Below are positions 8,835 to 29,681 of a stretch of 64,000 nt of DNA, in pieces. The position numbers were made by a program, and so were the translations under genes. The notes beneath the pieces are model-generated. The model had not been told where the DNA came from, searched no databases, and was given only the letters and a program-made list of their open reading frames with translations. The stretch is from the IMG/VR virus record IMGVR_UViG_3300020473_000011, positions 217,558 to 281,557 of that record; one strand, written 5' to 3'. Positions within the stretch are counted from its first letter, which is position 1, and every line of letters begins with the position of its first letter.

Positions 8835-8835
8835 C

Positions 8836-13051: not shown

Positions 13052-16000
13052 TTAGGCTAGGTTACCCCATATAACGTACCCGTATTCGGTATCTCCCAGC
13101 GTATAACGGCGATATAGCCAGCTACCGTCATCAGGGTCTCTGTACAGGATAGGCTCAACCACACCGTTTCGTATTGCCTCGATCATAGCTGCACGTGGTG
13201 AGTAAGTTCCTCGTGCTGTTCCGTTTTGCACTTTCTCGATCAACTCTTCACGGTACTTAGTACGCAAGTCACGTAACCACTGCATCAGGTCAATCTGAAC
13301 GATACCTGCCTTATAGCGTCGGAAGTCCTCACTTCGGAACTTAATAGGCAAGTTAACATCAACCCTGTCATGGAACGGCAATGGCTTCATAAGTGAGTAG
13401 TCGATGCTATCAAGCACAGTGGCCATATCAACAGCATACTCTACAAACAGGTCATCAGACTTAGCCACGGCCGCTTGCTTATAGCGGTCAATAATATCGA
13501 ACGTTGGAAGAATATTACCGACTAGCTTCGCGTAGTCAGCCGTGTCCATCGGCTTCATCATACGGTAGTGCATGTTCGCAACAGGGTCACTGAGCAGGTA
13601 CTGCTCGTAAGCTTGGCCAACGGCATTCACCATATCTTGGTAACTCGCGTACTTAGAGTGCAGCACGCCACCTGCTTCGGCACCTGTTGCCTGTGCGTAC
13701 GCTTCATCAATACGCGCGTCACTCAAGCCCATTGCCTTCAATGAACTGTAGAGCGAAGCAAGACCTTGCTCGTACTGCTCGTACAGACGGTCTAAGCGTT
13801 TTGCACTCACAGACTCTTGGTCATACTCGTCGTACAACGCAGTGTCACCTAGGTTAGACTGATCGAACTTATTGTAGCTCTCCGTGTCGCCTAGCCCTGC
13901 TTGTGCTACATCGGCGAATAGCTCGCCTTGCCCTAGCTGATACTGTTTCAGGCGCATGTAGTGTGCCTTTGACACCTCTTTTGCTTGTGCAAAGAACATA
14001 TCAGCTTGTGTAACGCTTAACCCAGCTTGCAGTAGTGCATTGTAGATTTCAGGCGCAACCAAGTCAGACTGTACTAGCTTGTTGTAAATAGCGCTGTCGC
14101 TTTCCAGTGATTGCTTGTAGCTCTGGTATGAGTCTGTTGTCTCTGCCAGCGCTTGACGCATAGCATGGTAGAACTCCGTCATACTCTCAGGCTTTTGTGC
14201 ATACCACTGATTACCAAACCAGTTCTCGCGCATGACCTTAACGACCTCGTCGTGCTCTTTCTCAGACAAGGCGACCTTTTGTTGTTTGAAGTCCCAGTGG
14301 TCGATAGCCACTTCGGTCAAGTTTGCGACCCACTTCTGGTATAGCTGACTTTCGCTCGGCGCAGCAAGTCTCTCAAAATCAAGACTATCAGCCAGCTTTG
14401 TGATCGTCTTGCGTAGCACAATCTCAATCTTCTTCGCGATACTCGACACATTCTGTGGATTAATACGCTTCATATCTGTAATGCGTATATCCGACGATGA
14501 TACCTTGTCCCGCAACCCGATTGGTCGGTCGTTCAACAGACTGTAGCCACGGCCATCACGTCGCATCGCTATCCAAAAGTCGGTCGACACTATATCGCGT
14601 ATTGGTACATACGCCTTGTTGGCTGCATGACCCAGTGGCACACCCACTGGGAGTGATAAGCTATAGGCCGTTGACGTTGGACGTACATGCGGTGTAAAGC
14701 GCTTTTTAATGTCCGTCTTTGTCGCCATTTCTGACGTCAGTGTTTGATAGAACTTAGTGTGTGTTGCGTAACGGCTTTCACTTAGCTGGTGGTAGCCCGT
14801 ACCACTAAATACTTCGCTGTAGTTGTCCAGCTGTTCAAAATGGATCGCGTTAGAGAATACGTCGAACGGTGACCACTTCGTGTAGGTCACATCAGCATTA
14901 ACATACTCTGACTCTATGCGGATAAAATCTTTATTCACGTAGTCATGCGCTTGTGCATTACGCAAGCGTATTACATCGGTAATTTTCACGTCTGGACGCG
15001 TCCGTACATCTTGGTCATACCGACGGTTCACGTCGACAGCTGAGACCTCAAGCTGCACCGAGTGGATAATACGACTTAACGTATGTTGGTCGTAGCGCTG
15101 TGTCCATTTTGGTAAACGGTAGTTCTCCACAAATGTTCGGGTAGGGATGACCCAGCGGTCAGTCTCAACCGTAACAGGTATACGTTGACCCATCGCACTT
15201 TGTTTGTACAGTACGGATGAACCCACGCCTTTTATTTGGTCGAGCATCTTAACCCACGCACTACCTACAATGCTGATTGATGGCGCTGTCGGCATCATAA
15301 CTTGATGGTAGCGTGCGCCCTGCATCATTGGTGCCGCATGCTGCTGAGGTTTGACCCATTGCTCACCCGTCATACGCACAGCTGTGCTGGTGGTCGGATT
15401 AACCTGCTTAGTCAGAATATCTTGTGACAAACTCAATGAGTCCGTTTTCTTCTTGATAAGCTCAAGCTCTTGGGTTCCCATTATCTGGTCTGTACTTGCA
15501 CGGTACGGCGACTGTATATGACTGCGCCCTAAGCTCTGCGAGATATGACCGTAGTCTTGCAACCAGTTCGGCAGCCCATAAGGGAACGTATGGCGGAATT
15601 TAGGGAACCAGTACTCAGCCTTTTGAGACAGCGTACTTCTAAAGCCCGTCAGTGAATCGAACTTAACTTCTTGTAGGTTAAGACTCGCCTTAGCAACTTT
15701 CATTTCAATACTTTTCAGACGCATAGAGTCTGCTTGCGACCACGGGGTCAGCTCTATTCGCTGAGTTACATAGCGCGTCAGTGCCTTTCGGCCATTGATG
15801 AGCTGTAGTGACCCCGATACATGGAAATCACTCTTAGTCATCGTCAGTGCAAACGGCTGGAACTTCGACATGTATGTCGTGCTCATGAATTTACCGTCAC
15901 GTGGCTTATAACCCTTCACGGTCTTAACGCGCATGTGTCGCCCAAGTGCATCAGTCACACTCGGGATCTTCATGTGCTTGTAATGCTCCGTCGTTGCTTT

Positions 16001-19000
16001 CTCCATCTGAGCACCTGCCATCGCTAAGTGGAAGTCCGTTGCTTTTGCAAGGTCAACCGCTGCAAACTTTGGATTAAACCCACGCAGTACTTCAAGTGCT
16101 ACATCAGTCAGGACAGGATTCTCGGCATAGCCTTCCTTCACGGCCATCGTTTCGTGCAAGTTGATCAGGGGCTGCATTACTTTTGAGTGTGCGTCGGCTA
16201 AGCGTATCGTCGTTCCAAACACTTCACTTGTCGTGTCAATTTTTGGCACGTTGTCCATCGTGATCTTAATCAATTCGACGGCAGTCTCCATCGTGTTGAT
16301 TTGCAGCTTAGTGCCCGTAACATCAGCTAAATACTTAGCCCAGCGCATAACAACCGACTCGACATGCTTCATTGCAAGGCTGTGCGGTTCCATCACAAGC
16401 ATAGCAACGTCGTTCATGATGGCATTGTATGAGGTTTCCGATTGCATTAGCACATCATTCATCGCCTTGATTTGACTACCTGCAATATTAAAGTTAGCCA
16501 CTTCTGGTAACTGCTCTACAAAGTTGTCCATCAGCCTCATGTGAGTTGTTTGAAGTCCTGCTATCTCCATTGAAGACTCTTTACTCAGCGTCACCTTATT
16601 TTGCAGCGCACGTTGTGCAAGTCTATTTAGTAATACAGCCTGTTCAAGTATAGTAAGAGCATCTTGGTTTTGGTAGTTAACGCCAATTTCTTTCGTGAGC
16701 TGACGGTCGCGAACAAGCAGCAAGCGCTCGCCTAAGTGTGCTGCATAGCTCGTTAGGCTCGCCAGCGACACATTGTTTAGCTCTGTACGAATGTGACCAC
16801 CACGCGTTAGTTTTGCACTGCCCTGTAGCTCAGTTGTTTTGACTGTGCTTAACGGCAAACCATCCTCATAATGCGTCTGGCCACCTGCAACGCGTGTGTA
16901 CAACAAGCCATCGGCCGTCGTGTCTTGTGACATTACGACGGTAGACGCGACGCCGTGCTCAATCGCTTGTCGTAGCGTCTGGTACTCGACAGTTGTCTCG
17001 ACTAAATTTGACGCATAGTCAGTGCCTGCCACGACTGAGGCATCGCTACTTAGGCGCGACGTACGCTGAACGGCCGAAGTTTCAATACGGTCTACCCAAT
17101 AGCGCACCGATGGCTCTGACGTTAGTGTGACCGCCTTAACGTGTTTACGGTTAAGGTCATGACCTTGACGGTGATAGATGTCCTGCTGTGTGCTACTAAG
17201 TTTAGACGTAACCAGCTGTGTACCAACTTGCACATTAGTCCATGATGCTTTCGTAAATGGCAGCTCTTCGCGGTGTGCTGATATTGAATCGGCCGTAACC
17301 AGCTTAATTAGCTCATCAATCGTAATACCGACTTTATCTAGCTTGAAGTTAACTAAGTCAGAGAGCACGCGGCTATTCTTGTCGACCTTAGTGAAGACAC
17401 CTTTTGGTATGGCTTTCAGTTGGCTAAACGCCCAATCGACTAGATTAGACTTTACAGCTTTAAGCCAGTCATTCGTATTGTAGGCGACTGCCTCAGCCTC
17501 AATATTGCTAACAGCATCGCGGCCAATCAGCACCGCATTTATCTGTGTTGAGGTATTTGATTTAGTCTCAAAATCAACACCATTCAATACACGCGTAATC
17601 CCTGAGTCTATGGCTAGTTGGGCACTGTCCATTAAAGTTGTGGATGCGTGCAGGGCAGTGTCTAGTGTCTGTGTGTTCTTTGGCGAAATTGCTTGCGAGC
17701 GTATCAGTTTCACAAGGTCTTGGTAGTACGTTGACCCCGAAATCACGTCCATACCCACAGGTTGTGGGAACATCGGCACGCCAGCTCTTTGAACATCAAA
17801 GTTACTTGCTGTTAGTGAATAGTTCTCGACCTCTATGATACGCAGGTCTACCTTGTTCTCTACGCGGGTGAATGGCTGTAGCGTGAACGCCTGACCCTTA
17901 ACAAGTTCAGCACCTGTCTTAGCGCCACGCGCCACAAGCGTTGACGACTTACTCGTGCCTAGGAAGCCCTGCACGCGCAGTGGTACCGTGCTAAAGCGGT
18001 TAATGGAAGTCTGCGCCATGTAGTATTCTAGAACGCTCTCAGCCTCACTACGGGCTTCGGTAAGGCGCAGAGGAACCACATTAAGTGACACCTTCGTTTC
18101 ACCCATAGCAAAAGGTACTGCGTCCATAAAGCCACTACGGCTCTTTTCAACAGTGAACGTTAAGCGGTCAGTCCTTGTGCTCATACCACTGACTTTATGC
18201 AGTTGCAGCGTATTCTCTTTGGTTGACGCTTTGTGCTTCCCGAATGGGATCAGGCGTGCTTCACTTGAGAACAGATAGCCCATCTTATTTAGGTCTATCG
18301 TTGTGGCGAACTTCTTAATCGTGTGGTTAACGTAACCTAGCCCTTTTGCTTGCGCTAAGGTTGAGCGGTGTACACGGCTGGGTATTTTTAACCCATCGCT
18401 ATAATTCCACGCCGATCCTGATTGCATTTCAAAGGGTACAACCTGTGCTTGTGCTACACGATTGCCCGTGCCCACATCAAACGCTGCGCGCTGCCACTTG
18501 TAGGCTGCATCACGGAAAAGTCGCAGGGCGACTGTCGAGATAAAACCGCTTTGACTGTTCAGTGTAAAGGTGACATCGTCGTCAGCGACTGACGACCGAG
18601 CTAACGCATTGTATAACAGCTCAATTGTGCTTGAGAATGCGTTACTCTCGCGTGCATCATAGCTTACCGTTTCAGGTAGACTGCTTGTAAGGTACGCTGC
18701 CGTTAAAAACTTGACTAGTTCCGCCGCAGGGACATCCTGATCGTCTCTAACGAGATTGATTATGTCTGTCCCAGCGGTGCTCAAGCGTGACATTAAGTAG
18801 CTCACGTCCTCGGCACTATCAGACGACAACAATGCCCGTGTGAAGCGTACTTTATCGACCCCCGAGTCAATTGACCAATTGCTCAGTACTTCGTAAAAAA
18901 GCTCAGCTACGTCACTTGTTCCTTTTGCTTGAGAAAAGACCAGCTTTTGTGCAGCTGGCATATTGCCGCCATTATCCAGACGGGTATTAATCCCCACCAC

Positions 19001-22000
19001 ATCATTTGAGGTGCCCACAGGCTTAGGCACTAGCGGATCAGTCGGTGCTGATGTTCGTGGTGCATTACGGCCATTCATAGGGTCGGCCGCCGCAGAGGTC
19101 GGAAACCCTCTGTTAGCCAGTATCGCATCGGCCATCGACGCTGTTGTGCTGCCTACTAAGTTGAAATTGAAGGATAGCGGGGCTTCCATCATGATGCGGT
19201 CAAGCGCATAACGTATAGCATACTTTAGCTCTTGTAATGCGTTTTGATTCGTCACTATATAGCGTAGTGTGTCGGCTATATGCGATTTAGTAGCACTTAC
19301 CTTGAAGAGCTGAACCAAGTGGTTTGACGCATGAAGCGACAAGGCACTTGTTGGCGCATAGCCAAGTGCGTCGGGTGCCGTGAAAGTATAGAGCTGCACA
19401 GGGTACGCCAGCATAGGCTCCGCGTATTGCATGCCACGACCTGTCACCGTCATGTTAACGTGCTTAGCGTCTCTCATGCGGTTAGCCGTCACTTGTAGGG
19501 CACTCATCGGCGCGCCTACCTTTGAGGTTAGGTGGCTTAGCTCTGCCATGGTCAGCTTTGTCGAGGCAAATGCGCGGTTGCTTTCTACGTACGAAGCTAA
19601 CCAGCGGTCTATTTTATCTTTCCCAGACCAGACACTACGTGTGGCATACGTACTATCAAAACCAGCTAGCGGTGCTTTAACACGCCATGATTTAATAACT
19701 TGTGAAAGTCCCAGTCTGTTCGTCTTAGTGAATGCCGAGCGTAGAGCCTCTAGCACGGTTTCCCCATGCGAAGAGGCTGACGAGGTGCCCTTTGTATCAC
19801 CTTGAAAGTCTGAACTACGGTGGAGTGATGCAAGCACTGTGTCATACCCCATCGCGATATGACGGCGAGCATGCGTGTAGTACTGCTGGTCGTAACCTAA
19901 TACCTCTTTTCGCTGGTATTGGCCAGCCACAAAAAGGCCATCAAAGGCTTGAAAGGGTACCTGATAGCGAATACCCCTCATATCTTCGTCAGCAATAGAG
20001 ATTGCACGCTTATCGCCTGTGAATAAAGCTGCTTGAGTCATGCTCTTTCGTGACGGGTAGGCCGCGCCGTATGACGCATTAGCACCCTCGTGGATAGACC
20101 TCGATACAAACGTAAAAGTCCATGTCTTGTAGGCAAGTCTACCCGCCAGCGTATTCAGTCCAATAAAGTACTGAACATCCGAATACGTCATCACGTTATG
20201 ATAAGTACGTGATGCAATTGTTCGATTGGTTTCACCGTTAGACAGTGCGCGACTGTAGTCAATATCTTGTGAAAAGCTGGTGCCTCGTTGCATTCCCTCA
20301 GAGTTAAGTAACTGGCGCTGAGCCGAGCGACTGTAGAGCATCATCATGCGCATGAACGGATCAGCCGTTGCTGCTTGCGTACCATGTATACCTGTTTTTG
20401 TGCTGTAACCCGAACGTGAAGTAAATTGACGCGCTAGGTAGGCGTGAGCCGTGTTTGCCCAGTTCCGAATGCTTGTCTGCTGGATCTCAAACTTAAAGTT
20501 ACCCACGGACAAGTCAACGTTCGACCTTAATAGCTTGTAGGACGCATCCATCGTGCGCACTGTTACGGTACTACCCAAGGCGTAGTTATGTTTGTTCGCA
20601 TGGTGTGCTGAACTACTTTGCATTACACGTGCTGAGTTATCATTTGTTTCATGGGATGTCTGGTAAAGGCCAACCATTGCATTTGTGTTCGTACTCGCAC
20701 GCGTAGACGGGGCGGAGATACCCACACGTTGAGGCTTAGCCTTGTAGTTGTCCCAAAAACCAGTCGTTAGCCTGACGTGGCGAACTTGGTCAACAGCGAA
20801 GCTTGGGATCTCAGGCGTCTTGTTCAAATCAGACGTCGACAGGTAGCATCGTATTTGATAACCCGTAAGTGTTCCATCTGCTGGTAACTGCTGTGGCTCG
20901 TTAGAGTATTCGGTGTACTTAGTTGTTAAAGACGATTGGTCACGATACTGTAGGCGGAACTCCGTAAGTACCGAGGTGCCCGTCGGTATGACTGAATACA
21001 ACGACGGTTCAACGCTCTGAATAACACGAAGAGACTCTACCTTAATGACATCAGATTCAAAGCTACCCACCCAGAAGCCACTCGCTTCCACAGGGTCTGA
21101 TAGAAATAGGCGCTTTTGGCCATCGCTATCATACTGGAAGTCTGTGCCTTTCATTTCACCGTGAATGTCATCATGTAACGCTACTTCATCAACAGGCTCG
21201 TAGACTTCGACTCGGCTCCTGAAATGAAGGCCATCCATCACGTTGTACTGACGCTCAAGTCGCAATTCTTCATCAGTTACCCATGCAACCTGCGTGCTTG
21301 ACTCCGTACCTTCGCTATCGGTAACAACCAATGTGCTGCCGTCACTAACAACCAATAATGGGTCACCGTCATGCCCTAGTGAAAAAGATTGGCTCTCGTA
21401 GTGCTCGCCCACAAGGCAATCACTAACACTCGGTAGATTAAAATAATCCGCCTTTTCTTCAAATAATATAACGGTCTCTGGTTGCTCACTATTAACTGCA
21501 CCGTTAGTCTTCTCAATAGACTGGATGACCGTTGAGACCTCTGCACCATCAGGCTCGCTGATGGCGACCATCGTCACGACATAATTACCATGCCATGTGC
21601 TGTAGTAACCTTTGCGCTGCACGACGATTGGGTCTTCGTTTAGGGTCTCTGATTCTACGCTGTATAAATCAACAAGTAGCGAGCTGGCAAGGTCTAAGCA
21701 GTAAACTTCACCCGTAACCCGTGCCGAGAAAACAACTAAAGAATTGTGAGCGTAAGCATGACCCACCTCGAAAGGAAGGGGCACCTCTTCAACGGTAAAC
21801 TCGTCAAATGAAATAAAGTAAACAGCCGTCGTTGATACCGCAACAATGCTACGAGAATAACCAAGCCACATTACGTGGTTTATATCGGCAACACCCTCTA
21901 CGTAACGAAATGGCGCAAAGACAAGGCAGCCATCAGGATCTTGCTGTACATAGAATACATCAATATGATTGCGAGTATTTCCTACCACCCACAACAGGTC

Positions 22001-22378
22001 TTCTGCCCACACGACATCGGTTGCAGGGTCGGAGAGGGTGATCGTTTGTTGATGCTCAAGGGTTGGAGAGAAGACCTCAATGGTTCCTCGGTCGGTCAGG
22101 ACTAAGACAACCTCTTTGCCTTCAATTGTACCGCTTATGGCACGCTTAGGGGCGTCGACCTCGACCACATAAACAATGTCATGGCCAAGCGGTGTTACGG
22201 CAACCACGTAGTTCTCAGCATGGTTATGCAGATACACGAGTCCTCTGTTATCGGGTATAACAGGCGCAACAAGCTGGTCTTTTTTATTAGACCACCATGA
22301 CCACTTACGGTCTAAATCGTCTACAAACGCTCTTAATTGAAGCGCGTCAATGCTTTCTCTTACACTCAAACTCGTCAC
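13052..22378 (-). CDS. Giant 3108-aa protein, putative virion structural or fibre protein
   Basis: 9.3-kb uninterrupted ORF; beta-rich N-terminal ~550 aa, then long Ser/Thr/Ala-rich quasi-periodic region and a 14-aa repeat tract. Function inferred from position only. Confidence 0.75.
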   Translation of the reverse strand: MTSLSVRESIDALQLRAFVDDLDRKWSWWSNKKDQLVAPVIPDNRGLVYLHNHAENYVVAVTPLGHDIVYVVEVDAPKRAISGTIEGKEVVLVLTDRGTIEVFSPTLEHQQTITLSDPATDVVWAEDLLWVVGNTRNHIDVFYVQQDPDGCLVFAPFRYVEGVADINHVMWLGYSRSIVAVSTTAVYFISFDEFTVEEVPLPFEVGHAYAHNSLVVFSARVTGEVYCLDLASSLLVDLYSVESETLNEDPIVVQRKGYYSTWHGNYVVTMVAISEPDGAEVSTVIQSIEKTNGAVNSEQPETVILFEEKADYFNLPSVSDCLVGEHYESQSFSLGHDGDPLLVVSDGSTLVVTDSEGTESSTQVAWVTDEELRLERQYNVMDGLHFRSRVEVYEPVDEVALHDDIHGEMKGTDFQYDSDGQKRLFLSDPVEASGFWVGSFESDVIKVESLRVIQSVEPSLYSVIPTGTSVLTEFRLQYRDQSSLTTKYTEYSNEPQQLPADGTLTGYQIRCYLSTSDLNKTPEIPSFAVDQVRHVRLTTGFWDNYKAKPQRVGISAPSTRASTNTNAMVGLYQTSHETNDNSARVMQSSSAHHANKHNYALGSTVTVRTMDASYKLLRSNVDLSVGNFKFEIQQTSIRNWANTAHAYLARQFTSRSGYSTKTGIHGTQAATADPFMRMMMLYSRSAQRQLLNSEGMQRGTSFSQDIDYSRALSNGETNRTIASRTYHNVMTYSDVQYFIGLNTLAGRLAYKTWTFTFVSRSIHEGANASYGAAYPSRKSMTQAALFTGDKRAISIADEDMRGIRYQVPFQAFDGLFVAGQYQRKEVLGYDQQYYTHARRHIAMGYDTVLASLHRSSDFQGDTKGTSSASSHGETVLEALRSAFTKTNRLGLSQVIKSWRVKAPLAGFDSTYATRSVWSGKDKIDRWLASYVESNRAFASTKLTMAELSHLTSKVGAPMSALQVTANRMRDAKHVNMTVTGRGMQYAEPMLAYPVQLYTFTAPDALGYAPTSALSLHASNHLVQLFKVSATKSHIADTLRYIVTNQNALQELKYAIRYALDRIMMEAPLSFNFNLVGSTTASMADAILANRGFPTSAAADPMNGRNAPRTSAPTDPLVPKPVGTSNDVVGINTRLDNGGNMPAAQKLVFSQAKGTSDVAELFYEVLSNWSIDSGVDKVRFTRALLSSDSAEDVSYLMSRLSTAGTDIINLVRDDQDVPAAELVKFLTAAYLTSSLPETVSYDARESNAFSSTIELLYNALARSSVADDDVTFTLNSQSGFISTVALRLFRDAAYKWQRAAFDVGTGNRVAQAQVVPFEMQSGSAWNYSDGLKIPSRVHRSTLAQAKGLGYVNHTIKKFATTIDLNKMGYLFSSEARLIPFGKHKASTKENTLQLHKVSGMSTRTDRLTFTVEKSRSGFMDAVPFAMGETKVSLNVVPLRLTEARSEAESVLEYYMAQTSINRFSTVPLRVQGFLGTSKSSTLVARGAKTGAELVKGQAFTLQPFTRVENKVDLRIIEVENYSLTASNFDVQRAGVPMFPQPVGMDVISGSTYYQDLVKLIRSQAISPKNTQTLDTALHASTTLMDSAQLAIDSGITRVLNGVDFETKSNTSTQINAVLIGRDAVSNIEAEAVAYNTNDWLKAVKSNLVDWAFSQLKAIPKGVFTKVDKNSRVLSDLVNFKLDKVGITIDELIKLVTADSISAHREELPFTKASWTNVQVGTQLVTSKLSSTQQDIYHRQGHDLNRKHVKAVTLTSEPSVRYWVDRIETSAVQRTSRLSSDASVVAGTDYASNLVETTVEYQTLRQAIEHGVASTVVMSQDTTADGLLYTRVAGGQTHYEDGLPLSTVKTTELQGSAKLTRGGHIRTELNNVSLASLTSYAAHLGERLLLVRDRQLTKEIGVNYQNQDALTILEQAVLLNRLAQRALQNKVTLSKESSMEIAGLQTTHMRLMDNFVEQLPEVANFNIAGSQIKAMNDVLMQSETSYNAIMNDVAMLVMEPHSLAMKHVESVVMRWAKYLADVTGTKLQINTMETAVELIKITMDNVPKIDTTSEVFGTTIRLADAHSKVMQPLINLHETMAVKEGYAENPVLTDVALEVLRGFNPKFAAVDLAKATDFHLAMAGAQMEKATTEHYKHMKIPSVTDALGRHMRVKTVKGYKPRDGKFMSTTYMSKFQPFALTMTKSDFHVSGSLQLINGRKALTRYVTQRIELTPWSQADSMRLKSIEMKVAKASLNLQEVKFDSLTGFRSTLSQKAEYWFPKFRHTFPYGLPNWLQDYGHISQSLGRSHIQSPYRASTDQIMGTQELELIKKKTDSLSLSQDILTKQVNPTTSTAVRMTGEQWVKPQQHAAPMMQGARYHQVMMPTAPSISIVGSAWVKMLDQIKGVGSSVLYKQSAMGQRIPVTVETDRWVIPTRTFVENYRLPKWTQRYDQHTLSRIIHSVQLEVSAVDVNRRYDQDVRTRPDVKITDVIRLRNAQAHDYVNKDFIRIESEYVNADVTYTKWSPFDVFSNAIHFEQLDNYSEVFSGTGYHQLSESRYATHTKFYQTLTSEMATKTDIKKRFTPHVRPTSTAYSLSLPVGVPLGHAANKAYVPIRDIVSTDFWIAMRRDGRGYSLLNDRPIGLRDKVSSSDIRITDMKRINPQNVSSIAKKIEIVLRKTITKLADSLDFERLAAPSESQLYQKWVANLTEVAIDHWDFKQQKVALSEKEHDEVVKVMRENWFGNQWYAQKPESMTEFYHAMRQALAETTDSYQSYKQSLESDSAIYNKLVQSDLVAPEIYNALLQAGLSVTQADMFFAQAKEVSKAHYMRLKQYQLGQGELFADVAQAGLGDTESYNKFDQSNLGDTALYDEYDQESVSAKRLDRLYEQYEQGLASLYSSLKAMGLSDARIDEAYAQATGAEAGGVLHSKYASYQDMVNAVGQAYEQYLLSDPVANMHYRMMKPMDTADYAKLVGNILPTFDIIDRYKQAAVAKSDDLFVEYAVDMATVLDSIDYSLMKPLPFHDRVDVNLPIKFRSEDFRRYKAGIVQIDLMQWLRDLRTKYREELIEKVQNGTARGTYSPRAAMIEAIRNGVVEPILYRDPDDGSWLYRRYTLGDTEYGYVIWGNLA

Positions 22379-22556
22379 CGTCTCAATAGAACCTGCTTAG
22401 TTAGCTTGCAGGCTGTCAGCTCAAATCTTGTCTCACATATATTCACTATTGTACAGTGCATCGCCAGTTGTAGCCAGTATTGTACAATGATTTGAAGGTC
22501 TGAGGGCTTCGCAGGTAGCGTGGGGCAGGCTAGACGATGGGCAGGTAATGCTGCAC

Positions 22557-22584
22557 AAAAAAGCCCGCGCGGGGCGGGCTTTTT
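22557..22584. terminator. Rho-independent terminator
   Basis: AAAAAAGCCCGC-gcggg-GCGGGCTTTTT. Confidence 0.8.
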
Positions 22585-22596
22585 AACGAGCTGCGT

Positions 22597-23817
22597 CTAC
22601 TTCTTCTTTTTAACTTCTGACTCTGGAATACCAGCGTCAACAAGATGAAGCATAATCAACTGCGTGTTGTATGGACCTGTCGGTTGGATGGCCACATAAC
22701 GACGGTACAGCTTCTCGCCAGAATCTGGGTCAGTCTCACCATACACGTGTACGTTAACTGGTAAGCCTGAGCTGATCACGTCTGCTGAGGTGAACGCAAC
22801 CATATCCATTTCTGATTTGAAGCGGAAACGTGCCGTGTTCAAGCGTGATGGGAATAAGATGGCGTAACGAGAACCCGCTTTTTCCACACTTGCAACACCG
22901 ATGTCACGCATTTCGATACGTGCTTGTTGTTGACGTAAGTTAACCACGGCGTTCGAGTCGCGGCTATTACGCCATGCGTCAGCTTGACGTGAAGGTGCAT
23001 TTACATCCTTCTCGCGTACAACAAAGCGCTTAACACAGATCGCACCGTTCTTAGTTGCGCCACTAATAGGCACATTATGCTGCTCAGCATACTCTTCGAA
23101 GAATTGCTGGTGGGCAGGCGTACGCTGGTTAGCCTCGTTAGAGATACCATACAACGCAAAGATCGGGTTACGACTACCAACAGGGTCAGCATCGCGAAGA
23201 GGCTCACCTGATGACTGGTCAACAGGGCGCTGAATAACGAACCAGCTTTGTGTCGGTGGATCACGCTGCTCGTCACCTTCTAACCACATACATAAGAAGA
23301 TACCGTAGTCTGTCACCGAGCCACGCCATGAAACAGGGTGTGCACGAAGGCGGCCTTTAACCACTGACGTATCGAAAAACGCACCTTGGCCGTTTTCAGA
23401 ACGCTTAGTTTCAACGGTATCAATATATGAGTACTCGTCGGCATGGCCTAGGTTACCCGATGGAATACCACGTGCATCCTGAATTACACCACCGTTACCT
23501 AAATCGCACTGTAGTAAGGTCGTTACCTGTGTCGAAATAGTTTGGTAGTTAAAGCTTGAATCAGCATGACCAGACTGGAACTGATTATTGCTGCTCATCT
23601 TGAGTGCAATCGGCTCATCTTCAAATAGATTTGTGCTATCACCAAGCGGCATGGCTAGGAAAGAGTAATCACTGTTATCAGTGAACTTCTCAAGCGAGTT
23701 CGGGAACTCATGTTTAATTTCCCAGCCCACAGTTTCCAACCAGCGCGCGATGTCGAATAACATCACGCGTAGGTCGCTGTAGCCGTATTTTACTGTACTG
23801 TCTACAGAAATTGACAT
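22597..23817 (-). CDS. QRPVD-family putative structural protein, A-type (406 aa)
   Basis: PTQSWFVIQRPVD, GSRNPIFALYGI, FVVREKDV, FPSRLNTARFRF, AFTSADVIS. Confidence 0.75.
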   Translation of the reverse strand: MSISVDSTVKYGYSDLRVMLFDIARWLETVGWEIKHEFPNSLEKFTDNSDYSFLAMPLGDSTNLFEDEPIALKMSSNNQFQSGHADSSFNYQTISTQVTTLLQCDLGNGGVIQDARGIPSGNLGHADEYSYIDTVETKRSENGQGAFFDTSVVKGRLRAHPVSWRGSVTDYGIFLCMWLEGDEQRDPPTQSWFVIQRPVDQSSGEPLRDADPVGSRNPIFALYGISNEANQRTPAHQQFFEEYAEQHNVPISGATKNGAICVKRFVVREKDVNAPSRQADAWRNSRDSNAVVNLRQQQARIEMRDIGVASVEKAGSRYAILFPSRLNTARFRFKSEMDMVAFTSADVISSGLPVNVHVYGETDPDSGEKLYRRYVAIQPTGPYNTQLIMLHLVDAGIPESEVKKKK

Positions 23818-23831
23818 TGTCTCACCTCAAC

Positions 23832-25748
23832 TTAAATTTGGTTATCTTTAATGGTACCTAGACGACCACCGTACCAACGCATTAGCATACGCATGCCTGT
23901 GTTGTACTTACCCGTCGAAGGTAGACCTTTATAAAGACGCGTCGTGCTTTCCCACTCACCGCCGTTTGCTTCACACGAAGCTTGGTCGGCATGGCCTGTC
24001 ACTGAACACACGCCTTCGTCGTACATAGCAAACTCAGAAAGTGCACCATTACTGATAACGTCCGCTGAGGTGTAGCCAATTAAGTCGGCTTCTTCTAGGT
24101 ACAGGTAGCGCTGCGTTGTTAAGCCTGACGGTACCGTGATTACGTACTCGTAATCTTCTGATACAGCAACTTGCTCAAACGTATTCAGCACCGCATTTGA
24201 ATCTGGCGCGTCTTCACCTGCGTTCAGCTCTTCACTTGGACGGTGGATGTCCGATTCACGTACCACGAAGTACATCGACTTCTGGAATTTCTCGTGATAA
24301 ACACCATACATACAGAAAAGTGGGCAGAATGACTTATTCTGGTCAACGAGTGGTGCACCTGTGTCCTTATCAACTAGACGTTGGATATTCAGCCAGCTAA
24401 AGCGGTGACCTTCATTCGTTTCGTATTGGTCAACAGCCTGATCCCATACTGCTAGAACAATACCGTGGTCAGACACAGTTAATGCGTAAGACATCGGAAC
24501 GTTTAGCGCGCCTTCCCGTGGATCACGTGCTTCACCATCGGTATCAAATGAGTTTTGCGCCATAGGGATCAACTCATAACGGCTGTTGTCATAAACTTCA
24601 ACACCGATGTTAGCTGTATCATCAATCGTCGTTAGATCCGTGATGGCGTGCTCTGTTAGCGTCCATACAGCATCACGCGCAGAGTCGTTAGCGAATTTAA
24701 CGCGCCAATCGAAGCTAAAGGCTGTGCCCGCATTCTTAACATCAATGCGCCAACCTTTTAGCTCTGAGTAGCTACCCTTCACAGTGAAGGCCACCTGCTG
24801 TGCTAGACCGTTTTCGTCACGTTCAGTACCTACTATAGCATCGGCGTCGATTGACGGTGGTAGGTCGCCCACTACTTTATAAGTAATGTAGCGCTGACCA
24901 TCTAGGTCTGCTAGGGTCTGGCTACCGTACTCTTTAAAGTAAAGCGTACACTTTCTTGGCTCGTATACAGGTTTCTTTAAGAGGTGGCCATAATCCGCGT
25001 CAGAAGGTGGCGTACGTTGTGAGTAACGACCTGATTCAGGGAAAGTCGCATTTAAGTCAACTTCCGATGCGTTCGTCATTTCGAACCATTCGATGTCAAG
25101 CTCGTACGTCACGCGACCCGATGTATCAAGACCCGCGACAGGTTCGATACGACGGCTGCCCCATACTTCTTGTGGTAGGCCACCACCTGATAACGGCTTT
25201 AAGTACCATTTAAGATTACCGTATGGGTCAGTTGATTGAACTTGAGTAACACGCGTATGATAAACCGCACGGTTAATAAAGCCATTTTCTTTATAGGCTT
25301 CATCAGTCATACGTAGACCGACAAAACCTAGCGTGCCCATCGTTGAGACTTGGTCAGCAAGATATTCTGTGTTCGGTGGAATATACGGAATTGCTGGTGC
25401 TTTTTTCTTGCCCCAGTCAATTTGCAGTGGTGTGGTTACGTTAATGTGACCCATACCATGGCCAATGCTATGTTGTGTATCAAAGCGGATAACCCAAGGT
25501 TGCTTCGCTTCAACACCATCCACACAAGCGTCGATATGCGGTGTAGCCTGAATAATGATCACGTCATTCGCAGGGCTGTTTGGATTTGTAAAGTCTAAGT
25601 CACTAATATCGGTAGGATAAGTGATCTCAAATGCGTTGTTATCTGCGCCATCGTAGAACTCTGTCAGGTCTTTTACAACAGACGTGAATAGCTCTCTTGG
25701 CGTCGCAAAACCGCCACGTGTGACGGAATACGGCTCAAATGCTGCCAT
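23832..25748 (-). CDS. QRPVD-family putative structural protein, B-type with large insertion (638 aa)
   Basis: PYSVTRGGF, PMSYALTVSDHG, QRLVDKDTGAPL, FVVRESDIHRPSE. Confidence 0.75.
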   Translation of the reverse strand: MAAFEPYSVTRGGFATPRELFTSVVKDLTEFYDGADNNAFEITYPTDISDLDFTNPNSPANDVIIIQATPHIDACVDGVEAKQPWVIRFDTQHSIGHGMGHINVTTPLQIDWGKKKAPAIPYIPPNTEYLADQVSTMGTLGFVGLRMTDEAYKENGFINRAVYHTRVTQVQSTDPYGNLKWYLKPLSGGGLPQEVWGSRRIEPVAGLDTSGRVTYELDIEWFEMTNASEVDLNATFPESGRYSQRTPPSDADYGHLLKKPVYEPRKCTLYFKEYGSQTLADLDGQRYITYKVVGDLPPSIDADAIVGTERDENGLAQQVAFTVKGSYSELKGWRIDVKNAGTAFSFDWRVKFANDSARDAVWTLTEHAITDLTTIDDTANIGVEVYDNSRYELIPMAQNSFDTDGEARDPREGALNVPMSYALTVSDHGIVLAVWDQAVDQYETNEGHRFSWLNIQRLVDKDTGAPLVDQNKSFCPLFCMYGVYHEKFQKSMYFVVRESDIHRPSEELNAGEDAPDSNAVLNTFEQVAVSEDYEYVITVPSGLTTQRYLYLEEADLIGYTSADVISNGALSEFAMYDEGVCSVTGHADQASCEANGGEWESTTRLYKGLPSTGKYNTGMRMLMRWYGGRLGTIKDNQI

Positions 25749-25936
25749 TGCTCATTTCCTCGTTACTTTAGTCTCAGCACCATTGATACGGCGATACTGC
25801 AATCTCAGGTGTAGTTATGATTGTACAACGGATGTGCAGGCGTTGTACAACGGAGACTATAAAAAACTTACAAGAAGCAACCTAGGGAAAAACTGCACAC
25901 TAGGCCACTTCGTCAATTAATACCTTAAAACGTTCT

Positions 25937-27283
25937 TTAGTTTTGAGGCGGTGCGTCAGCGTCGATCTCAGTCAGCATTAGAACCGTCATATTCGTGTTG
26001 TACGAGTTATTCGGTGTTAACGCTGTGTACTTACGATAGCGCGCTTGGTTCTCAAGTACCTTACCGTCGGCATCTTTCGCACCTTCGTTGTAAACATTTA
26101 CACGAATAGTAAGCTGTGGCGCGATAACGTCACTACTTGTATACGCGATCATGTCAAGGTCATGCTGATAGCGGAAGCGCTTAGTGTTTAAGCGGTTAGG
26201 GTACAAGATAACGTACTTTGCACCCGCCAAAATAAAGCTACCTTGGTTGGTGGTCTCTGAGCTAGCTCGGAACTCAACACGCGTCTGCTGTTGCACTTCG
26301 TTTAACCACGCATTCGAGTCACGCGTATTACGAGTGGCATCTTCTGGGTAAGTTGGTTTAAGTACGTCTTTTTCGCGCACAGTAAATTTCTGTACGATAC
26401 CCGATAGCGGACGTAACGACACAGGTGTTGCCATACCGATTGGCACTTGGCCATTCATATCGTAGGTGTACGTCGTGCGGTCGTCAGTAAAGCCATACGT
26501 ATCATAGATGTGTTTGTTGTAGATACCGTACATACAGAACACAGGGTTACGACTGCCTAGTGGATCAGGGTCTTGTAGGGCGTTACCTGTCTTTTGGTCA
26601 ACAGGACGCTGCACACAAACCCAAGATTGCGTAGGTGAGTCACCCGCTGATTGGTCGTCAGACTCAATCCAATAAGCGAACACAAAGCCACGGTTTGATA
26701 CTGATAAACGGAAGCTCATTGGGTAAGCTCGTAGCATTCCGTTGAACTCACGCACGTCGATGAAGTTCAACGTTTGGATATTGAAGCCATGCGCAGGGAT
26801 CGGGTCGTTCTTGATTGAGTTCACTGCTGATGACGCGCCCATCACAACCACATCGCGGTAGTTGTGTGGTACTGTATGCGGTGATTCACCTACGTGGCCA
26901 CACACATAGCCGCGAAGGTTAGGGATAGCCTCATCATAGTCATCACCTAATTGAAGTGGGGTTGCCACTTGGATCTGACAGGTGTACTGGCTATCGGCCG
27001 TCACACGAATACGCCAAGGTTCTTCATCGTGAAGCATGTTAACTGCATCAGTCGTTTCAAGCACGGCTTCGATGTTTTGTGGATTAGCTGGATCGAATGT
27101 GATTGGCGTACGTGTGATTAACGTAAAGCCATTCGCAATCATGAGTTGCAGCCAATCCGAGACCATTTCACGTACGTCGGTAAAACCGTCACGCGTCACA
27201 GTCGTTACAAATTGCGTATCACCACTTGTTAGTGGTGCTGCTAGGGTTGACGTGTAAACGTCACCGTTGATGTTTAGTGCCAT
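25937..27283 (-). CDS. QRPVD-family putative structural protein, A-type (448 aa)
   Basis: PTQSWVCVQRPVD, GSRNPVFCMYGI, YPNRLNTKRFRY, AYTSSDVIA. Confidence 0.75.
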   Translation of the reverse strand: MALNINGDVYTSTLAAPLTSGDTQFVTTVTRDGFTDVREMVSDWLQLMIANGFTLITRTPITFDPANPQNIEAVLETTDAVNMLHDEEPWRIRVTADSQYTCQIQVATPLQLGDDYDEAIPNLRGYVCGHVGESPHTVPHNYRDVVVMGASSAVNSIKNDPIPAHGFNIQTLNFIDVREFNGMLRAYPMSFRLSVSNRGFVFAYWIESDDQSAGDSPTQSWVCVQRPVDQKTGNALQDPDPLGSRNPVFCMYGIYNKHIYDTYGFTDDRTTYTYDMNGQVPIGMATPVSLRPLSGIVQKFTVREKDVLKPTYPEDATRNTRDSNAWLNEVQQQTRVEFRASSETTNQGSFILAGAKYVILYPNRLNTKRFRYQHDLDMIAYTSSDVIAPQLTIRVNVYNEGAKDADGKVLENQARYRKYTALTPNNSYNTNMTVLMLTEIDADAPPQN

Positions 27284-27297
27284 TAGTCAGCCCCTTC

Positions 27298-28638
27298 TTA
27301 ATTTCCGCCCGCAGGAATGATGCCCGACACGCCAATGTTGTCTTGCGTCATAATCGCGTTGTTATACCAGCGCATTAAGATGCGTAAGCCCGTATTGTAC
27401 TCACCCGTTGCACGTAAGCCTTTGTAGCGCTTCTTCGTACCGTCTTCGTACATAGATAGCTCGGCGATGCCGTCTTGTGAAATGATGTCTGCTGAGCAGT
27501 AGCCCATCAAATCCATTTCCTCTAAGTACATGTAACGTTGCGTGTTCAAACCAGACGGGATAGTTACAACGTACTCGTAGTTCTCCGTCACGCTGATCTG
27601 TTCAAGCGGGTTGATTAGGGCAACACTATCTCGCGTGTTGATTGTCGCGTCTAAGTCTTCACTTGGACGATGCACGTCTGATTCACGCACTACGAAGTAG
27701 CGTGTCTCATTCAGTGTTTGGTTTTGAATGCCGTACATACAAACAAGCGGCGCGTGGCTCTCTGCTTGGTTGATTAGTGGTGCACCTGAGTCTTTGTCGA
27801 CTAGACGTTGTGCTGCGAACCAGCTGTGACGACAACCTGTATGGTCGTACTGGTCGGTTGCTTCTTCCCAGATAGCTAACATAATACCGTGGTCTGATAC
27901 AGTTAATGCGTAAGACATTGGAATGTTAGGCGTACCCGCAACGGCAACCTGTGCTGTATCAGGGAACTTGTCTTCGAACTCACGCTTTGCATCATATAGT
28001 GGACGACGGCAGAAAAAGCCTTTGTCTTCAATTTCTAGACGTAGCTGGTCGTTAGGGTCACACCACGAAACTTGCTTGTCGATAACGGGAATACGTCGAC
28101 CTAAGAAACCCAGTGTACCTTCAACAACAGGGTCGTCATTCTTGCCGCCTTTGTTCGGTGGCGTGTAGTCATAGAGCTGCCAGTCACCTTGTGCAGGTTT
28201 AAATAACTGTAACGGCGTCGATACGTTAATGTGAAGGTTACCAATCTCTGGTGCCTTATCATTACGGTCTTCACGACGGTTATTATGACTCGGGTGACAT
28301 TGCTTACCTACACCTGAATCAAAGCGAATGATCCATGGTTGCGGTACGACTGATACACCGTGAGTCGCGCGCTCAGGGTCTGCACCTGCTAGGTGGTCTA
28401 CGAAGCCAGTAGCTTCGATAACGAACACCGATGAATCAAACGACAATGGGTCGCTCAGATCAGGGTTGTCCGATGGGTATAAAAGTTTGAAAGCATTCTC
28501 TGATGCCGTAGGGTCATCAGGGTGCTCATAATAATCTGTTAAATCACGGACAACCGACGTAACCAGCGCTTTAAGCGTAGTGAAACCACCACGTTCAATG
28601 CTGTACGGTTGGAAATCCGCTCTCATTTCAAATGCCAT
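27298..28638 (-). CDS. QRPVD-family putative structural protein, B-type (446 aa)
   Basis: PYSIERGGF, PMSYALTVSDHG, QRLVDKDSGAPL, FVVRESDVHRPSE. Confidence 0.75.
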   Translation of the reverse strand: MAFEMRADFQPYSIERGGFTTLKALVTSVVRDLTDYYEHPDDPTASENAFKLLYPSDNPDLSDPLSFDSSVFVIEATGFVDHLAGADPERATHGVSVVPQPWIIRFDSGVGKQCHPSHNNRREDRNDKAPEIGNLHINVSTPLQLFKPAQGDWQLYDYTPPNKGGKNDDPVVEGTLGFLGRRIPVIDKQVSWCDPNDQLRLEIEDKGFFCRRPLYDAKREFEDKFPDTAQVAVAGTPNIPMSYALTVSDHGIMLAIWEEATDQYDHTGCRHSWFAAQRLVDKDSGAPLINQAESHAPLVCMYGIQNQTLNETRYFVVRESDVHRPSEDLDATINTRDSVALINPLEQISVTENYEYVVTIPSGLNTQRYMYLEEMDLMGYCSADIISQDGIAELSMYEDGTKKRYKGLRATGEYNTGLRILMRWYNNAIMTQDNIGVSGIIPAGGN

Positions 28639-28720
28639 AAGTTGTTAACTCCGTCACATCGGCAGCCATTGCTGCGATTAAAAGCCCAGTTACATGTCCG
28701 CGACGAGCGCGGTCTAGCAC

Positions 28721-28732
28721 CATTGTACAATG
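28721..28732. promoter_or_regulatory. Palindromic operator-like site
   Basis: Perfect CATTGTACAATG, paired with a second core at 28757. Confidence 0.7.
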
Positions 28733-28776
28733 AATGTGCAGAGTATTACAGTTTCATTGTACAACCATTGATGCCG

Positions 28777-29673: not shown

Positions 29674-29681
29674 GCTCTGCC

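What the first reader, a model, noticed from the sequence alone, without database searches (positions are those of the whole stretch)
13052..22378. 3108-aa giant ORF with modular, quasi-periodic architecture
Seen: N-terminal ~400 aa of short beta-strand-like segments (propeller-like); a YQIRCYLSTSD..TPEI segment; about 2000 aa of Ser/Thr/Ala/Met-rich sequence with aromatic or aliphatic residues recurring about every 15 aa (for example ELFY..VRF..VSY..VKF..VSY..LLY..VTF..RLF); then a helical repeat tail. No enzyme motif recognised. Inference: a long filament or solenoid such as a virion fibre or sheath-associated hair.
Basis: partly seen in the sequence, partly recalled or inferred. Interest (0 to 1): 0.6.

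Follow-up and report, generated by a model that had tools for sequence, protein, structure and literature searches.

The report
Orphan giant propeller-plus-solenoid phage protein
A marine jumbo phage encodes a real 3,100-residue protein with no known relatives outside seven sister phages, built from a beta-propeller head, a long array of 15-residue helix-loop units and a near-invariant tail; it sits among the tail-building genes and is probably a long structural appendage of the virus particle, but this is untested.

Summary
The 3108-aa ORF (window 13052-22378, minus strand) is real. It is intact and syntenic in seven related jumbo-phage genomes (2719-3390 aa), has its own terminator-bounded transcription unit, and is tiled by marine metatranscriptome contigs. 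It is an orphan: no Pfam, PHROG, NCBIfam or PDB match, no phage-database match, and an exhaustive profile search of 1.84 billion proteins found only family members. The architecture is modular. Residues 1-540 are conserved and hold a beta-propeller. Residues ~1010-1990 are an array of ~15-residue helix-loop units (significant in six of seven members), alpha-solenoid-like rather than beta-solenoid. Residues 1990-2500 are indel-prone. The C-terminal module is conserved and helical, with one ~98-aa duplication and a last 208 aa that are 55% invariant. There are no conserved catalytic motifs. The gene always lies between a six-fold paralogue array (the Lu11 gp246/247 family) and the sheath/tube genes, and evolves much faster than those neighbours. 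A separate 1634-aa ORF with an embedded lysin-like segment holds the tape-measure position. Best reading (confidence ~0.4): an elongated virion or tail-associated structural protein. The "fibre or hair" idea is plausible but unproven, because both AlphaFold models were low-confidence and no virion data exist.

The parts
13052..22378 (-). Giant ORF, 3108 aa from GTG 22378 (probable true start TTG 22369, 3105 aa); stop codon at 13052-13054
   Evidence: intact single ORF in seven genomes
20759..22378 (-). aa 1-540: conserved N-terminal module, a beta-propeller (aa ~55-380) plus a beta-rich region containing YQIRCYLSTSD..TPEI (aa 507-524); 29% invariant columns
19349..20758 (-). aa 541-1010: nearly gap-free but fast-diverging region with no periodicity; fold unknown
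16409..19348 (-). aa 1011-1990: array of ~65 helix-loop units with a 15.0-15.3-residue period (harmonics 7.5 and 3.8), alpha-solenoid-like; the fastest-evolving part (2% invariant columns)
   Evidence: helices in the AlphaFold model coincide with the units
15479..16408 (-). aa 1991-2300: moderately conserved block containing the invariant FPYGLPNWLQDYG motif (aa 2265-2277); partly deleted in P0005
14879..15478 (-). aa 2301-2500: hypervariable indel region (72 to 526 aa among homologues)
13679..14878 (-). aa 2501-2900: conserved, predicted helical, Tyr/Gln-rich module containing a ~98-aa-spaced duplication (aa 2726-2799 = window 13982-14203; aa 2824-2897 = window 13688-13909)
13055..13678 (-). 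aa 2901-3108: near-invariant C-terminal module (55% invariant columns; 54-92% identity across all seven members); candidate anchoring or partner-binding domain
22448..22486 (-). Two copies of the genome-wide promoter-like motif TGTACAAT, 70 and 101 nt upstream of the GTG
22555..22585 (-). GC-rich hairpin followed by a T run (intrinsic terminator) right after the last paralogue, which isolates the giant gene as its own transcription unit
   Evidence: read directly from the sequence
22597..31450 (-). Upstream array of six paralogues (phrog_12249, the Lu11 gp246/247 and Y3 gp151/152 family) at 22597-23817, 23832-25748, 25937-27283, 27298-28638, 28777-29673 and 30371-31450; always precedes the giant gene

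Best explanation
The ORF encodes a clade-specific giant structural protein of a marine, Pseudoalteromonas-associated jumbo myophage. Shown: it is a real, conserved, separately transcribed gene that is fixed in the tail-morphogenesis cluster between a six-fold paralogue array and the sheath/tube genes. It has a conserved N-terminal beta-propeller module, a ~1000-aa array of 15-residue helix-loop units, an indel-prone region and a near-invariant helical C-terminus. It has no catalytic motifs and evolves far faster than its neighbours, mainly in the middle. Inferred: the invariant C-terminal module anchors the protein to a conserved virion partner, possibly the products of the adjacent paralogue array. 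The helix-loop array would form an elongated alpha-solenoid rod or flexible arm some tens of nanometres long. The beta-propeller would act as a distal binding head, in the way the seven-bladed propeller of phiKZ gp131 sits at the distal end of fibres built from a paralogue family. On this reading it works as an external tail- or neck-associated appendage, fibre- or hair-like, that contacts the cell surface or environment, with its exposed middle free to diverge.
For: Reality and conservation: one uninterrupted ORF of 2719-3390 aa in seven genomes. Marine metatranscriptome contigs at 99-100% identity tile the gene body but not the upstream spacer. The gene has its own terminator and promoter-like motifs. 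Context: the order is always paralogue array, giant, a few small genes, then sheath (PF04984), tube and baseplate on one strand. It is most compact in the most divergent genome. Architecture: propeller; 15-residue helix-loop period; helical C-terminus with a duplication; conserved ends and a variable middle. Rate: neighbours are 74-94% identical to the P. umbrosa locus while the giant is 47%; in L005 neighbours are 64-85% and the giant 30%. No enzyme signature. Cys is nearly absent, 0.1% against 1.2% in the proteome, as is common in exposed structural proteins (my own knowledge). Precedent for a propeller on jumbo-phage fibres built from paralogues: PMC13250141. The distant relatives Lu11, Y3 and AD1 are 'hairy' myoviruses whose hair proteins are unidentified (PMC6143709, PMC7247149).
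Against: There is no direct evidence that the protein is in virions. Both AlphaFold models are low confidence (mean pLDDT 35 and 38), so the solenoid and the anchoring role rest on sequence patterns. The conservation pattern, with the C-terminus most conserved and the propeller at the N-terminus, is the reverse of typical receptor-binding fibres, whose distal C-terminus is the variable part. Phage fibres are usually beta-structured trimers, and an alpha-solenoid fibre would be unusual. The homotrimer test of the C-terminal module gave no answer. The periodic signal is weak in the seventh member, and a period-2 component appears in two members. No homologue exists in the characterised 'hairy' phages, so it cannot be their hair protein.
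Confidence: 0.4

Rival explanations
1. It is an internal virion or ejected protein, packaged in the head or tail lumen and delivered into the cell. The analogue is the 3,500-aa N4 virion RNA polymerase or T7/phiKZ-type ejection and inner-body proteins, with a C-terminal module for incorporation and an N-terminal module acting at entry.
For: It has giant size with no recognisable motifs, and conserved termini with a divergent middle. This resembles N4 vRNAP, whose terminal domains serve injection and encapsidation (my own knowledge). The distant relative PaBG packages a 221-kDa non-fibre protein, gp202 (PMC7412058). Fast evolution is common among injected proteins.
Against: No polymerase, helicase or nuclease motifs are conserved (Walker A, DxD-type, HExxH and HD[SA] are all absent). 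There is no profile similarity to PaBG gp202. The gene sits in the tail cluster, not the head cluster. A propeller followed by a long helix-loop array looks like scaffold architecture, not an enzyme.
Confidence: 0.2
2. It is a non-virion assembly factor: a giant scaffold, template or chaperone used to build the tail, baseplate or appendages, or to organise the paralogue-array proteins, and then discarded.
For: The gene lies in the morphogenesis cluster. A propeller plus alpha-solenoid is classic protein-protein scaffolding architecture. aa 561-1300 is nearly gap-free in all members despite 14-30% identity, which suggests geometric constraint.
Against: No assembly chaperone of this size is known in phages (my own knowledge). 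Large indels are tolerated in aa 1330-2520, which argues against a strict ruler. The fastest-evolving gene of the cluster is unexpected for an internal assembly template.
Confidence: 0.15
3. It is a non-structural intracellular protein, such as a host-takeover or compartment/coat-like scaffold (beta-propeller followed by alpha-solenoid, as in membrane-coat and nucleoporin-type proteins), that happens to be encoded beside the tail genes.
For: The domain order matches the propeller-solenoid coat architecture. The top structural matches to the N-terminus include BBSome, IFT-A, COPI and Sec31 propellers, but any propeller would give these. Directly downstream, relatives carry variable accessory or anti-defence genes such as AcrVA2-like.
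Against: The propeller hits are generic, with hundreds at similar Z. Synteny with structural genes is strict in all seven genomes, and in G001 there is no accessory island at all. The same promoter-like motif precedes the paralogues and tail genes.
Confidence: 0.15
4. It is the tail tape-measure protein.
For: It is very long, has conserved termini with a variable middle, has periodic hydrophobic residues, and its length is broadly conserved.
Against: The canonical position, after the sheath, tube and two small genes and before the baseplate and gp5-like spike, is held by another ORF of 1634 aa (1325 aa in G001). That ORF has an embedded endolysin-like segment. The giant lies upstream of the sheath behind its own terminator. 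A ~350-aa beta-propeller and helices broken every 15 residues do not fit a protein that must lie extended in the tube lumen. At 1.5 A per residue, 3108 aa would imply a ~470-nm tail, against 150-165 nm in the distant relatives (PMC6143709).
Confidence: 0.03

Closest known systems
phiKZ gp131-gp135 tail-fibre system (paralogue family with a seven-bladed beta-propeller at the distal fibre end)
   Same: A jumbo myophage; a tandem array of paralogues sharing one domain next to a propeller-bearing protein in the tail gene region; the propeller is proposed as a host-contact head (PMC13250141).
   Different: There is no sequence similarity. gp131 is 771 aa with a C-terminal propeller, whereas here the propeller is N-terminal on a 3108-aa chain with a ~1000-aa helix-loop array. 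The paralogues here share a C-terminal domain, not an N-terminal one.
Hair or whisker filaments of 'hairy' myoviruses (Lu11, Y3, AD1; Rak2-like CBB and phAPEC6)
   Same: By its paralogue family and tail genes, this genome is distantly related to the Lu11/Y3/AD1 group. The hairs are long, flexible, of unknown protein composition and proposed to contact hosts (PMC7247149, PMC6143709).
   Different: None of those phages has a homologue of this protein. No micrograph exists for this clade, so whether it is hairy is unknown.
Alpha-solenoid repeat proteins (HEAT, ARM or TPR-like), including propeller-plus-solenoid coat-type proteins
   Same: A regular succession of short amphipathic helices separated by short capping loops, degenerate at sequence level, preceded by a beta-propeller.
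   Different: The unit is ~15 residues per helix (~30 per presumed hairpin), shorter than HEAT, ARM or TPR units. No Pfam repeat model matches. The three-dimensional superhelix is not demonstrated, since the model has pLDDT below 50 there.
Adenovirus/reovirus triple beta-spiral fibre shaft (15-residue repeat)
   Same: The same repeat length of about 15 residues, in a candidate viral fibre.
   Different: The hydrophobic pattern is i, i+3/4, i+7 with S/T/D-x-x-E capping boxes. There is no fixed Gly or Pro turn position (Gly at most 0.13 and Pro at most 0.09 at any phase), and AlphaFold draws helices. This indicates helix-loop units, not a beta-spiral.
N4 virion RNA polymerase and other giant packaged phage proteins
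   Same: About 3000+ aa, orphan-like sequence, and terminal domains conserved for virion functions.
   Different: No polymerase motifs are conserved; it has a repeat or scaffold-type architecture; it is located in the tail cluster.

Membership tests
Tail tape-measure protein | Gene lies between the tube or tail-chaperone genes and the baseplate hub | tested here: not met
   That position is held by a 1634-aa ORF with an endolysin-like segment and by a 1325-aa ORF in G001. The giant lies upstream of the sheath behind a terminator.
Tail tape-measure protein | Largely continuous alpha-helix able to lie extended in the tube lumen, without large globular beta domains | tested here: not met
   There is an N-terminal beta-propeller, and the helices are interrupted every ~15 residues by polar, Gly or Pro loops.
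Tail tape-measure protein | Protein length sets tail length | not testable with these tools
   No particle measurements exist for this clade.
Beta-propeller fold (N-terminal module) | Circular array of 4-stranded blades | tested here: met
   All 50 listed PDB matches are propellers, with Z 12.4-14.9 and 166-226 residues aligned. About 30 short strands are predicted. Moderate confidence only: pLDDT is 58-82 for aa ~75-210 and lower elsewhere. No WD40, NHL or Kelch Pfam match.
Alpha-solenoid repeat proteins | Tandem helix-turn units with regular spacing | tested here: met
   The period is 15.0-15.3 with harmonics, p about 0.003-0.005, in six of seven members. Stacked units show a capping loop followed by an amphipathic helix.
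Alpha-solenoid repeat proteins | Units stack into an elongated superhelix | tested here: inconclusive
   The AlphaFold model of aa 1-1200 has pLDDT below 50 in this region. aa 1200-1990 was not folded.
Triple beta-spiral fibre shaft (adenovirus type) | 15-residue repeat with alternating hydrophobic residues and a conserved Gly or Pro turn | tested here: not met
   The phase table shows no Gly or Pro column and helix-type spacing. Caveat: a period-2 component appears in P0004 and P0005.
Trimeric phage tail fibre or spike | Homotrimerisation | tested here: inconclusive
   The trimer prediction for the last 208 aa gave 'no answer'.
Trimeric phage tail fibre or spike | Known fibre, spike or chaperone domains (collar, Peptidase_S74, beta-helix and similar) | tested here: not met
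   No Pfam, PHROG or NCBIfam hit in any member tested.
Virion RNA polymerase or other giant packaged enzymes | Conserved catalytic motifs (polymerase Asp motifs, Walker A, metal-binding His or Asp clusters) | tested here: not met
   None is conserved in five or more of six members, and no family or PDB profile hit was found.
phrog_12249 'tail sheath' family (the neighbours) | Homology of the giant to this family or to genuine sheath proteins | tested here: not met
   The family profile of the giant hits nothing else in its own genome. The paralogue family itself shows no profile similarity to genuine sheaths (probability 0.5%).
Virion structural protein (generic) | Presence in purified particles | not testable with these tools
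   No proteome or micrograph exists for this clade. There is only gene-order evidence.

The most novel reading that the evidence does not exclude
The protein is a new class of phage appendage: a monomeric or low-order alpha-solenoid arm (about 65 helix-loop units) tipped by a beta-propeller, rather than the usual trimeric beta-structured fibre. Equivalently, it would be a phage-encoded 'propeller plus solenoid' coat-type scaffold that forms a lattice or sleeve around the tail together with the six paralogues. It would then be a candidate molecular basis for hair-like or sleeve-like decorations in a marine jumbo-phage lineage.
Probability: 0.15. Interest if true: 0.75.

Novelty: new variant of a known kind. 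Interest (0 to 1): 0.45.

Why it matters
Giant orphan genes take up a sizeable share of jumbo-phage genomes, and almost none has an assigned role. This one is among the largest phage ORFs and is widespread in seawater data sets from at least ten studies. It has a tractable handle, because a cultured Pseudoalteromonas umbrosa strain carries a relative. It also shows an unusual, testable architecture of propeller, helix-loop array and invariant anchor. If it is an external appendage, it would extend the repertoire of phage host-contact structures beyond beta-structured trimers and could bear on the unresolved identity of 'hairs' on jumbo myoviruses. If it is internal or non-virion, it would be a new kind of giant scaffold. 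Either way, its rapid divergence next to slowly evolving tail genes marks it as a likely interface with the host or environment.

Tried and rejected
- Megablast and tblastn of the ORF against 50,697 phage records found nothing.
- Pfam, PHROGs and NCBIfam on the protein and its homologues found nothing; the one NCBIfam row, at E 0.05, is noise.
- The family profile against PDB sequences found nothing.
- BLASTP and profile comparison with the large virion proteins of Y3 (gp150, gp154), Lu11 (gp242, gp244) and PaBG (gp202), and with all ORFs of its own genome, found nothing.
- Word searches for shorter proteins related to the N-terminal 560 aa or the C-terminal 549 aa found nothing.
- The Atlas feature search on aa 561-2300 gave no usable hit.
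- AlphaFold on aa 1-1200 (4 sequences) and aa 2501-3108 (6 sequences) gave mean pLDDT 35 and 38. Only the propeller core is usable, so I ran no fold search on the C-terminal model.
- Foldseek against viral models gave only generic propeller proteins with TM below 0.15.
- The homotrimer prediction for the last 208 aa returned no verdict, which is neither support nor evidence against.
- Self-BLAST found no repeats. hhalign's one-file self mode printed no rows, so I used 406 tile pairs instead. Two script calls were lost to an I/O hang.
- A Chou-Fasman propensity profile was flat and uninformative.
- A first attempt at the exhaustive profile search was rejected for exceeding 1,200 positions and was re-run on aa 2000-3108. 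The N-terminal and middle parts were therefore not searched exhaustively.
- PADLOC on the ten ORFs downstream of the giant gene found nothing.
- The literature search for virion proteomes of relatives carrying the paralogue family found nothing accessible.
- The idea that the array changes length in ~235-aa modules was dropped, because indel sizes are heterogeneous at 42-252 aa.
- No alternative genetic code was needed.
Full report
**The observation**

The window holds a single open frame on the minus strand from 22378 to 13052, 3108 aa from a GTG. Six of the seven family members begin Met/Leu-Ser/Asn-Val at the position aligned with its residue 4, a TTG preceded by GGTGA. The true start is therefore probably 22369. 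The window is the last 64 kb of a 281,557-bp virus record (CheckV completeness 67%), which makes this a jumbo phage. GC content is even across the gene.

**Is it a real gene?**

Yes, on four lines of evidence:
- Full-length, uninterrupted homologues exist in six other contigs: P0002 at 65% identity, P0003 at about 50%, and P0004-P0006 and the G001 protein at 30-35%. Their lengths are 2719-3390 aa.
- A GC-rich hairpin followed by a T run closes the preceding gene.
- Two copies of TGTACAAT lie 70 and 101 nt upstream. This motif occurs 124 times in the genome against about 10 expected, mostly in spacers 40-120 nt before gene starts.
- In two marine metatranscriptome runs from one sample, short contigs at 99-100% identity tile the gene body (window 17.0-22.2 kb) and none covers the upstream spacer. 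This fits transcription, but such libraries can hold DNA.

Near-identical DNA occurs in seawater or marine metagenomes from at least ten studies.

**It is an orphan family**

- No Pfam, PHROG or NCBIfam model matches it or its homologues.
- The family profile matches no PDB sequence.
- Neither megablast nor tblastn finds it in 50,697 phage records.
- An exhaustive HMM search with aa 2000-3108 against 1.84 billion representative proteins returned only three clusters, all giants of this family.
- Word searches found no shorter proteins related to either terminal module.
- Scans of IMG/VR and of 185,579 prokaryotic species genomes added one divergent member (2837 aa) and re-found Pseudoalteromonas umbrosa strain B95.
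- There is no similarity to the large virion proteins of the distant relatives Y3, Lu11 and PaBG, and no paralogue in its own genome.

**Genomic context**

Upstream on the same strand lie six paralogues that match phrog_12249, labelled 'tail sheath'. They are full-length homologues of Lu11 gp246/247 and Y3 gp151/152, which have two copies each. They show no profile similarity to genuine sheath proteins (probability 0.5%), so that label is doubtful.

Downstream, the relatives have a few small genes and then the genuine sheath (PF04984/PF17482), the tube and baseplate genes. In this genome the sheath is at G000 211.5-213.4 kb. A ~14-kb island, with a tyrosine-recombinase-like gene and several orphans, has been inserted between the giant and that block. 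In the most divergent genome the order is fully compact: six paralogues, the giant, three small genes, sheath, tube and on to a 1325-aa ORF.

After the sheath, tube and three small genes, this genome has a 1634-aa ORF, followed further on by a gp5-like spike. Its residues 935-1017 match phage endolysins. That is the expected tape measure or tail lysin, so the giant is not the tape measure.

**Evolutionary rate**

Against the P. umbrosa locus the neighbours are 74-94% identical and the giant 47%. Against L005 the neighbours are 64-85% identical and the giant 30%. Against G001 they are 57-77% and about 30%.

Divergence is concentrated in the middle. Invariant columns among six members:

| Residues | Invariant columns |
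|---|---|
| 1-540 | 29% |
| 541-1300 | 8% |
| 1301-1990 | 2% |
| 1991-2300 | 7% |
| 2301-2500 | 1% |
| 2501-2900 | 14% |
| 2901-3108 | 55% |

aa 561-1300 is almost gap-free in all members. Large indels are confined to aa ~1330-1630, 1886-2137 and 2300-2520.

**N-terminal module**

AlphaFold with four sequences gave a poor model overall (mean pLDDT 35). It drew about 30 short strands over aa 57-380, with pLDDT 58-82 for aa ~75-210. An exhaustive structural comparison returned only beta-propellers at the top, with Z 12.4-14.9 and 190-226 aligned residues. Language-model features also pointed to LVIVD, SGL and NHL propellers.

**The middle and the periodicity**

Self-BLAST finds no repeats. A first spectrum over aa 550-2600 was marginal. 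Profile-profile comparison of 406 tile pairs found nothing significant in the middle; the best was aa 1101-1236 against 1332-1464, E 1.4e-3 before correction.

The family-averaged hydrophobic signal tells a different story. It shows a clear 15.0-15.3-residue period, with harmonics at 7.5 and 3.8, restricted to aa ~1010-1990. The power is 12.9 in aa 1011-1310, and 12.2 and 11.1 in aa 1301-1990, against a shuffle 95th percentile of about 8 (p about 0.003). There is no signal in aa 561-1010 or 1990-2500. The phase is coherent from aa ~1130 to ~2030. Each of P0001-P0006 shows the period on its own (band p of 0.025 or less), and it is the global maximum in five of the six. The seventh member, which is shorter here, shows it only weakly (p = 0.11).

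Stacked in rows of 15, the units read as a 4-5-residue polar loop, often an S/T/D-x-x-E capping box. A ~10-residue amphipathic helix with hydrophobic residues at i, i+3/4 and i+7 follows. The pattern is conserved in divergent members, with no fixed Gly or Pro position. It also coincides with the helices AlphaFold drew at aa 1156-1168, 1173-1184 and 1189-1196.

This is a helix-loop, alpha-solenoid-like array of about 65 units. It is not a beta-solenoid or an adenovirus-type beta-spiral. One caveat is that two members also show a period-2 component.

Composition is only mildly unusual. S+T is 18% in the middle against 13% in the proteome. Cys is almost absent, with none in aa 561-2500.

**C-terminal module**

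The six-sequence model is again low confidence (mean pLDDT 38). It is almost all helix from aa ~2640 to ~3070, ending in a beta-hairpin. One internal duplication is significant: aa 2726-2799 against 2824-2897, probability 83%, E 1e-5. No catalytic-type motif is conserved anywhere in the protein. A controlled homotrimer prediction for the last 208 aa gave no verdict.

**Interpretation**

What is shown:
- It is a real, clade-restricted giant gene fixed inside the tail-morphogenesis cluster.
- It has conserved end modules and a fast-evolving repeat-like middle.
- It has no enzyme signature.

What is inferred is an elongated structural protein of the particle. The invariant C-terminus would serve as an anchor, perhaps to the products of the adjacent paralogue array. 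The helix-loop array would serve as a rod or arm, and the propeller as a distal binding head.

phiKZ gives a precedent. Its fibres are built from a paralogue family, with a seven-bladed propeller at the distal end (PMC13250141).

The distant relatives Lu11, Y3 and AD1 are 'hairy' myoviruses (PMC6143709). In phAPEC6 the hairs are flexible filaments of unknown composition (PMC7247149). None of these phages has a homologue of this protein, and no image of this clade exists.

I put 0.4 on the virion-appendage reading. The rivals, with my estimates, are:
- packaged or ejected protein, 0.2
- discarded assembly scaffold, 0.15
- non-structural propeller-solenoid scaffold, 0.15
- tape measure, 0.03

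**Comparison with known families and novelty**

The protein fails the membership tests for tape measure, beta-spiral fibre, known fibre domains and packaged enzymes. It meets the fold-level test for a propeller and the sequence-level test for a helix-loop repeat array.

It is best described as a new variant of the known kind 'giant structural proteins of jumbo phages', with an architecture (propeller, 15-residue helix-loop array, invariant helical tail) that I did not find described. Interest is moderate. The object is real and unusual, but its function is not established.

**Limits**

- Only two folds and one exhaustive profile search were available, and aa 1200-1990 was never folded.
- aa 1-2000 was not searched exhaustively.
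- Alignments hold at most seven sequences.
- Contigs laid on the gene cannot show transcript ends or strand.

Noticed in passing
window 22448-22486 and genome-wide (G000): The motif TGTACAAT, mostly TTGTACAAT[G/A], occurs 124 times in the 281.6-kb genome against about 10 expected. It lies mostly in spacers 40-120 nt upstream of gene starts on the same strand. A longer form, AATCGTTGTACAATGATT, precedes many small plus-strand genes. It is a candidate phage-specific promoter, perhaps with early and late variants.
   Followed up: partly
window 22597-31450 (minus strand): There are six tandem paralogues (298-638 aa) of phrog_12249, which is labelled 'tail sheath'. They share a conserved C-terminal ~200 aa and have variable N-termini. 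Lu11 and Y3 have only two copies. Profile comparison with genuine sheath proteins shows no similarity (probability 0.5%), so the label is doubtful and the family's role is open.
   Followed up: partly
window 1-12966 (minus strand mostly): A ~14-kb variable island lies between the giant gene and the tail block. It holds a 375-aa orphan, a tyrosine-recombinase/integrase-like gene (10571-11842, PF00589), 582- and 691-aa orphans, and two adjacent 259-aa paralogues (1821-2600, 2660-3439). The island is absent from the P. umbrosa and G001 loci. L005 and L009 carry an AcrVA2-like gene at the same spot. There are no PADLOC hits. Iyer et al. (PMC7824862) report a tyrosine-recombinase-type topoisomerase in Lu11/PaBG-group phages, which may be relevant.
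   Followed up: partly
L007:12084-16988 (G000 204084-208988, outside the window): A 1634-aa ORF sits in the canonical tape-measure position, downstream of the sheath, the tube and three small genes. It has an Ala/Gly-rich stretch, and residues 935-1017 match phage endolysins. It is a probable tape measure or tail lysin. The equivalent in G001 is 1325 aa.
   Followed up: partly
L003 / L014 (Pseudoalteromonas umbrosa strain B95, NODE_9, 202.6 kb): A cultured bacterium's assembly contains a 202.6-kb contig of a closely related jumbo phage, with structural genes 74-94% identical. This suggests lysogeny, pseudolysogeny or a carrier state, and gives a likely host genus for the clade.
   Followed up: no
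L003:21965-22405, L005:22079-22525, L009:15948-16412; G000 C1:215765-216196 (just outside the window): A small CheW-like protein (PF01584) is conserved between the giant gene and the sheath gene in several members. A chemotaxis-adaptor fold inside a phage tail gene cluster is unexpected. It is missing in G001.
   Followed up: no
window 50476-51828 (minus strand): This gene is a tRNA nucleotidyltransferase (CCA-adding enzyme family, phrog_2244, E 4e-125). A DNA-polymerase-like gene lies at 49398-50462 and a helicase at 60812-61966.
   Followed up: no
window 18346: One metatranscriptome contig (run X15, depth 43) lacks 4 bases inside the giant gene, which would shift the frame. The DNA runs do not show the deletion. 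It may be an assembly error or a minor variant.
   Followed up: no
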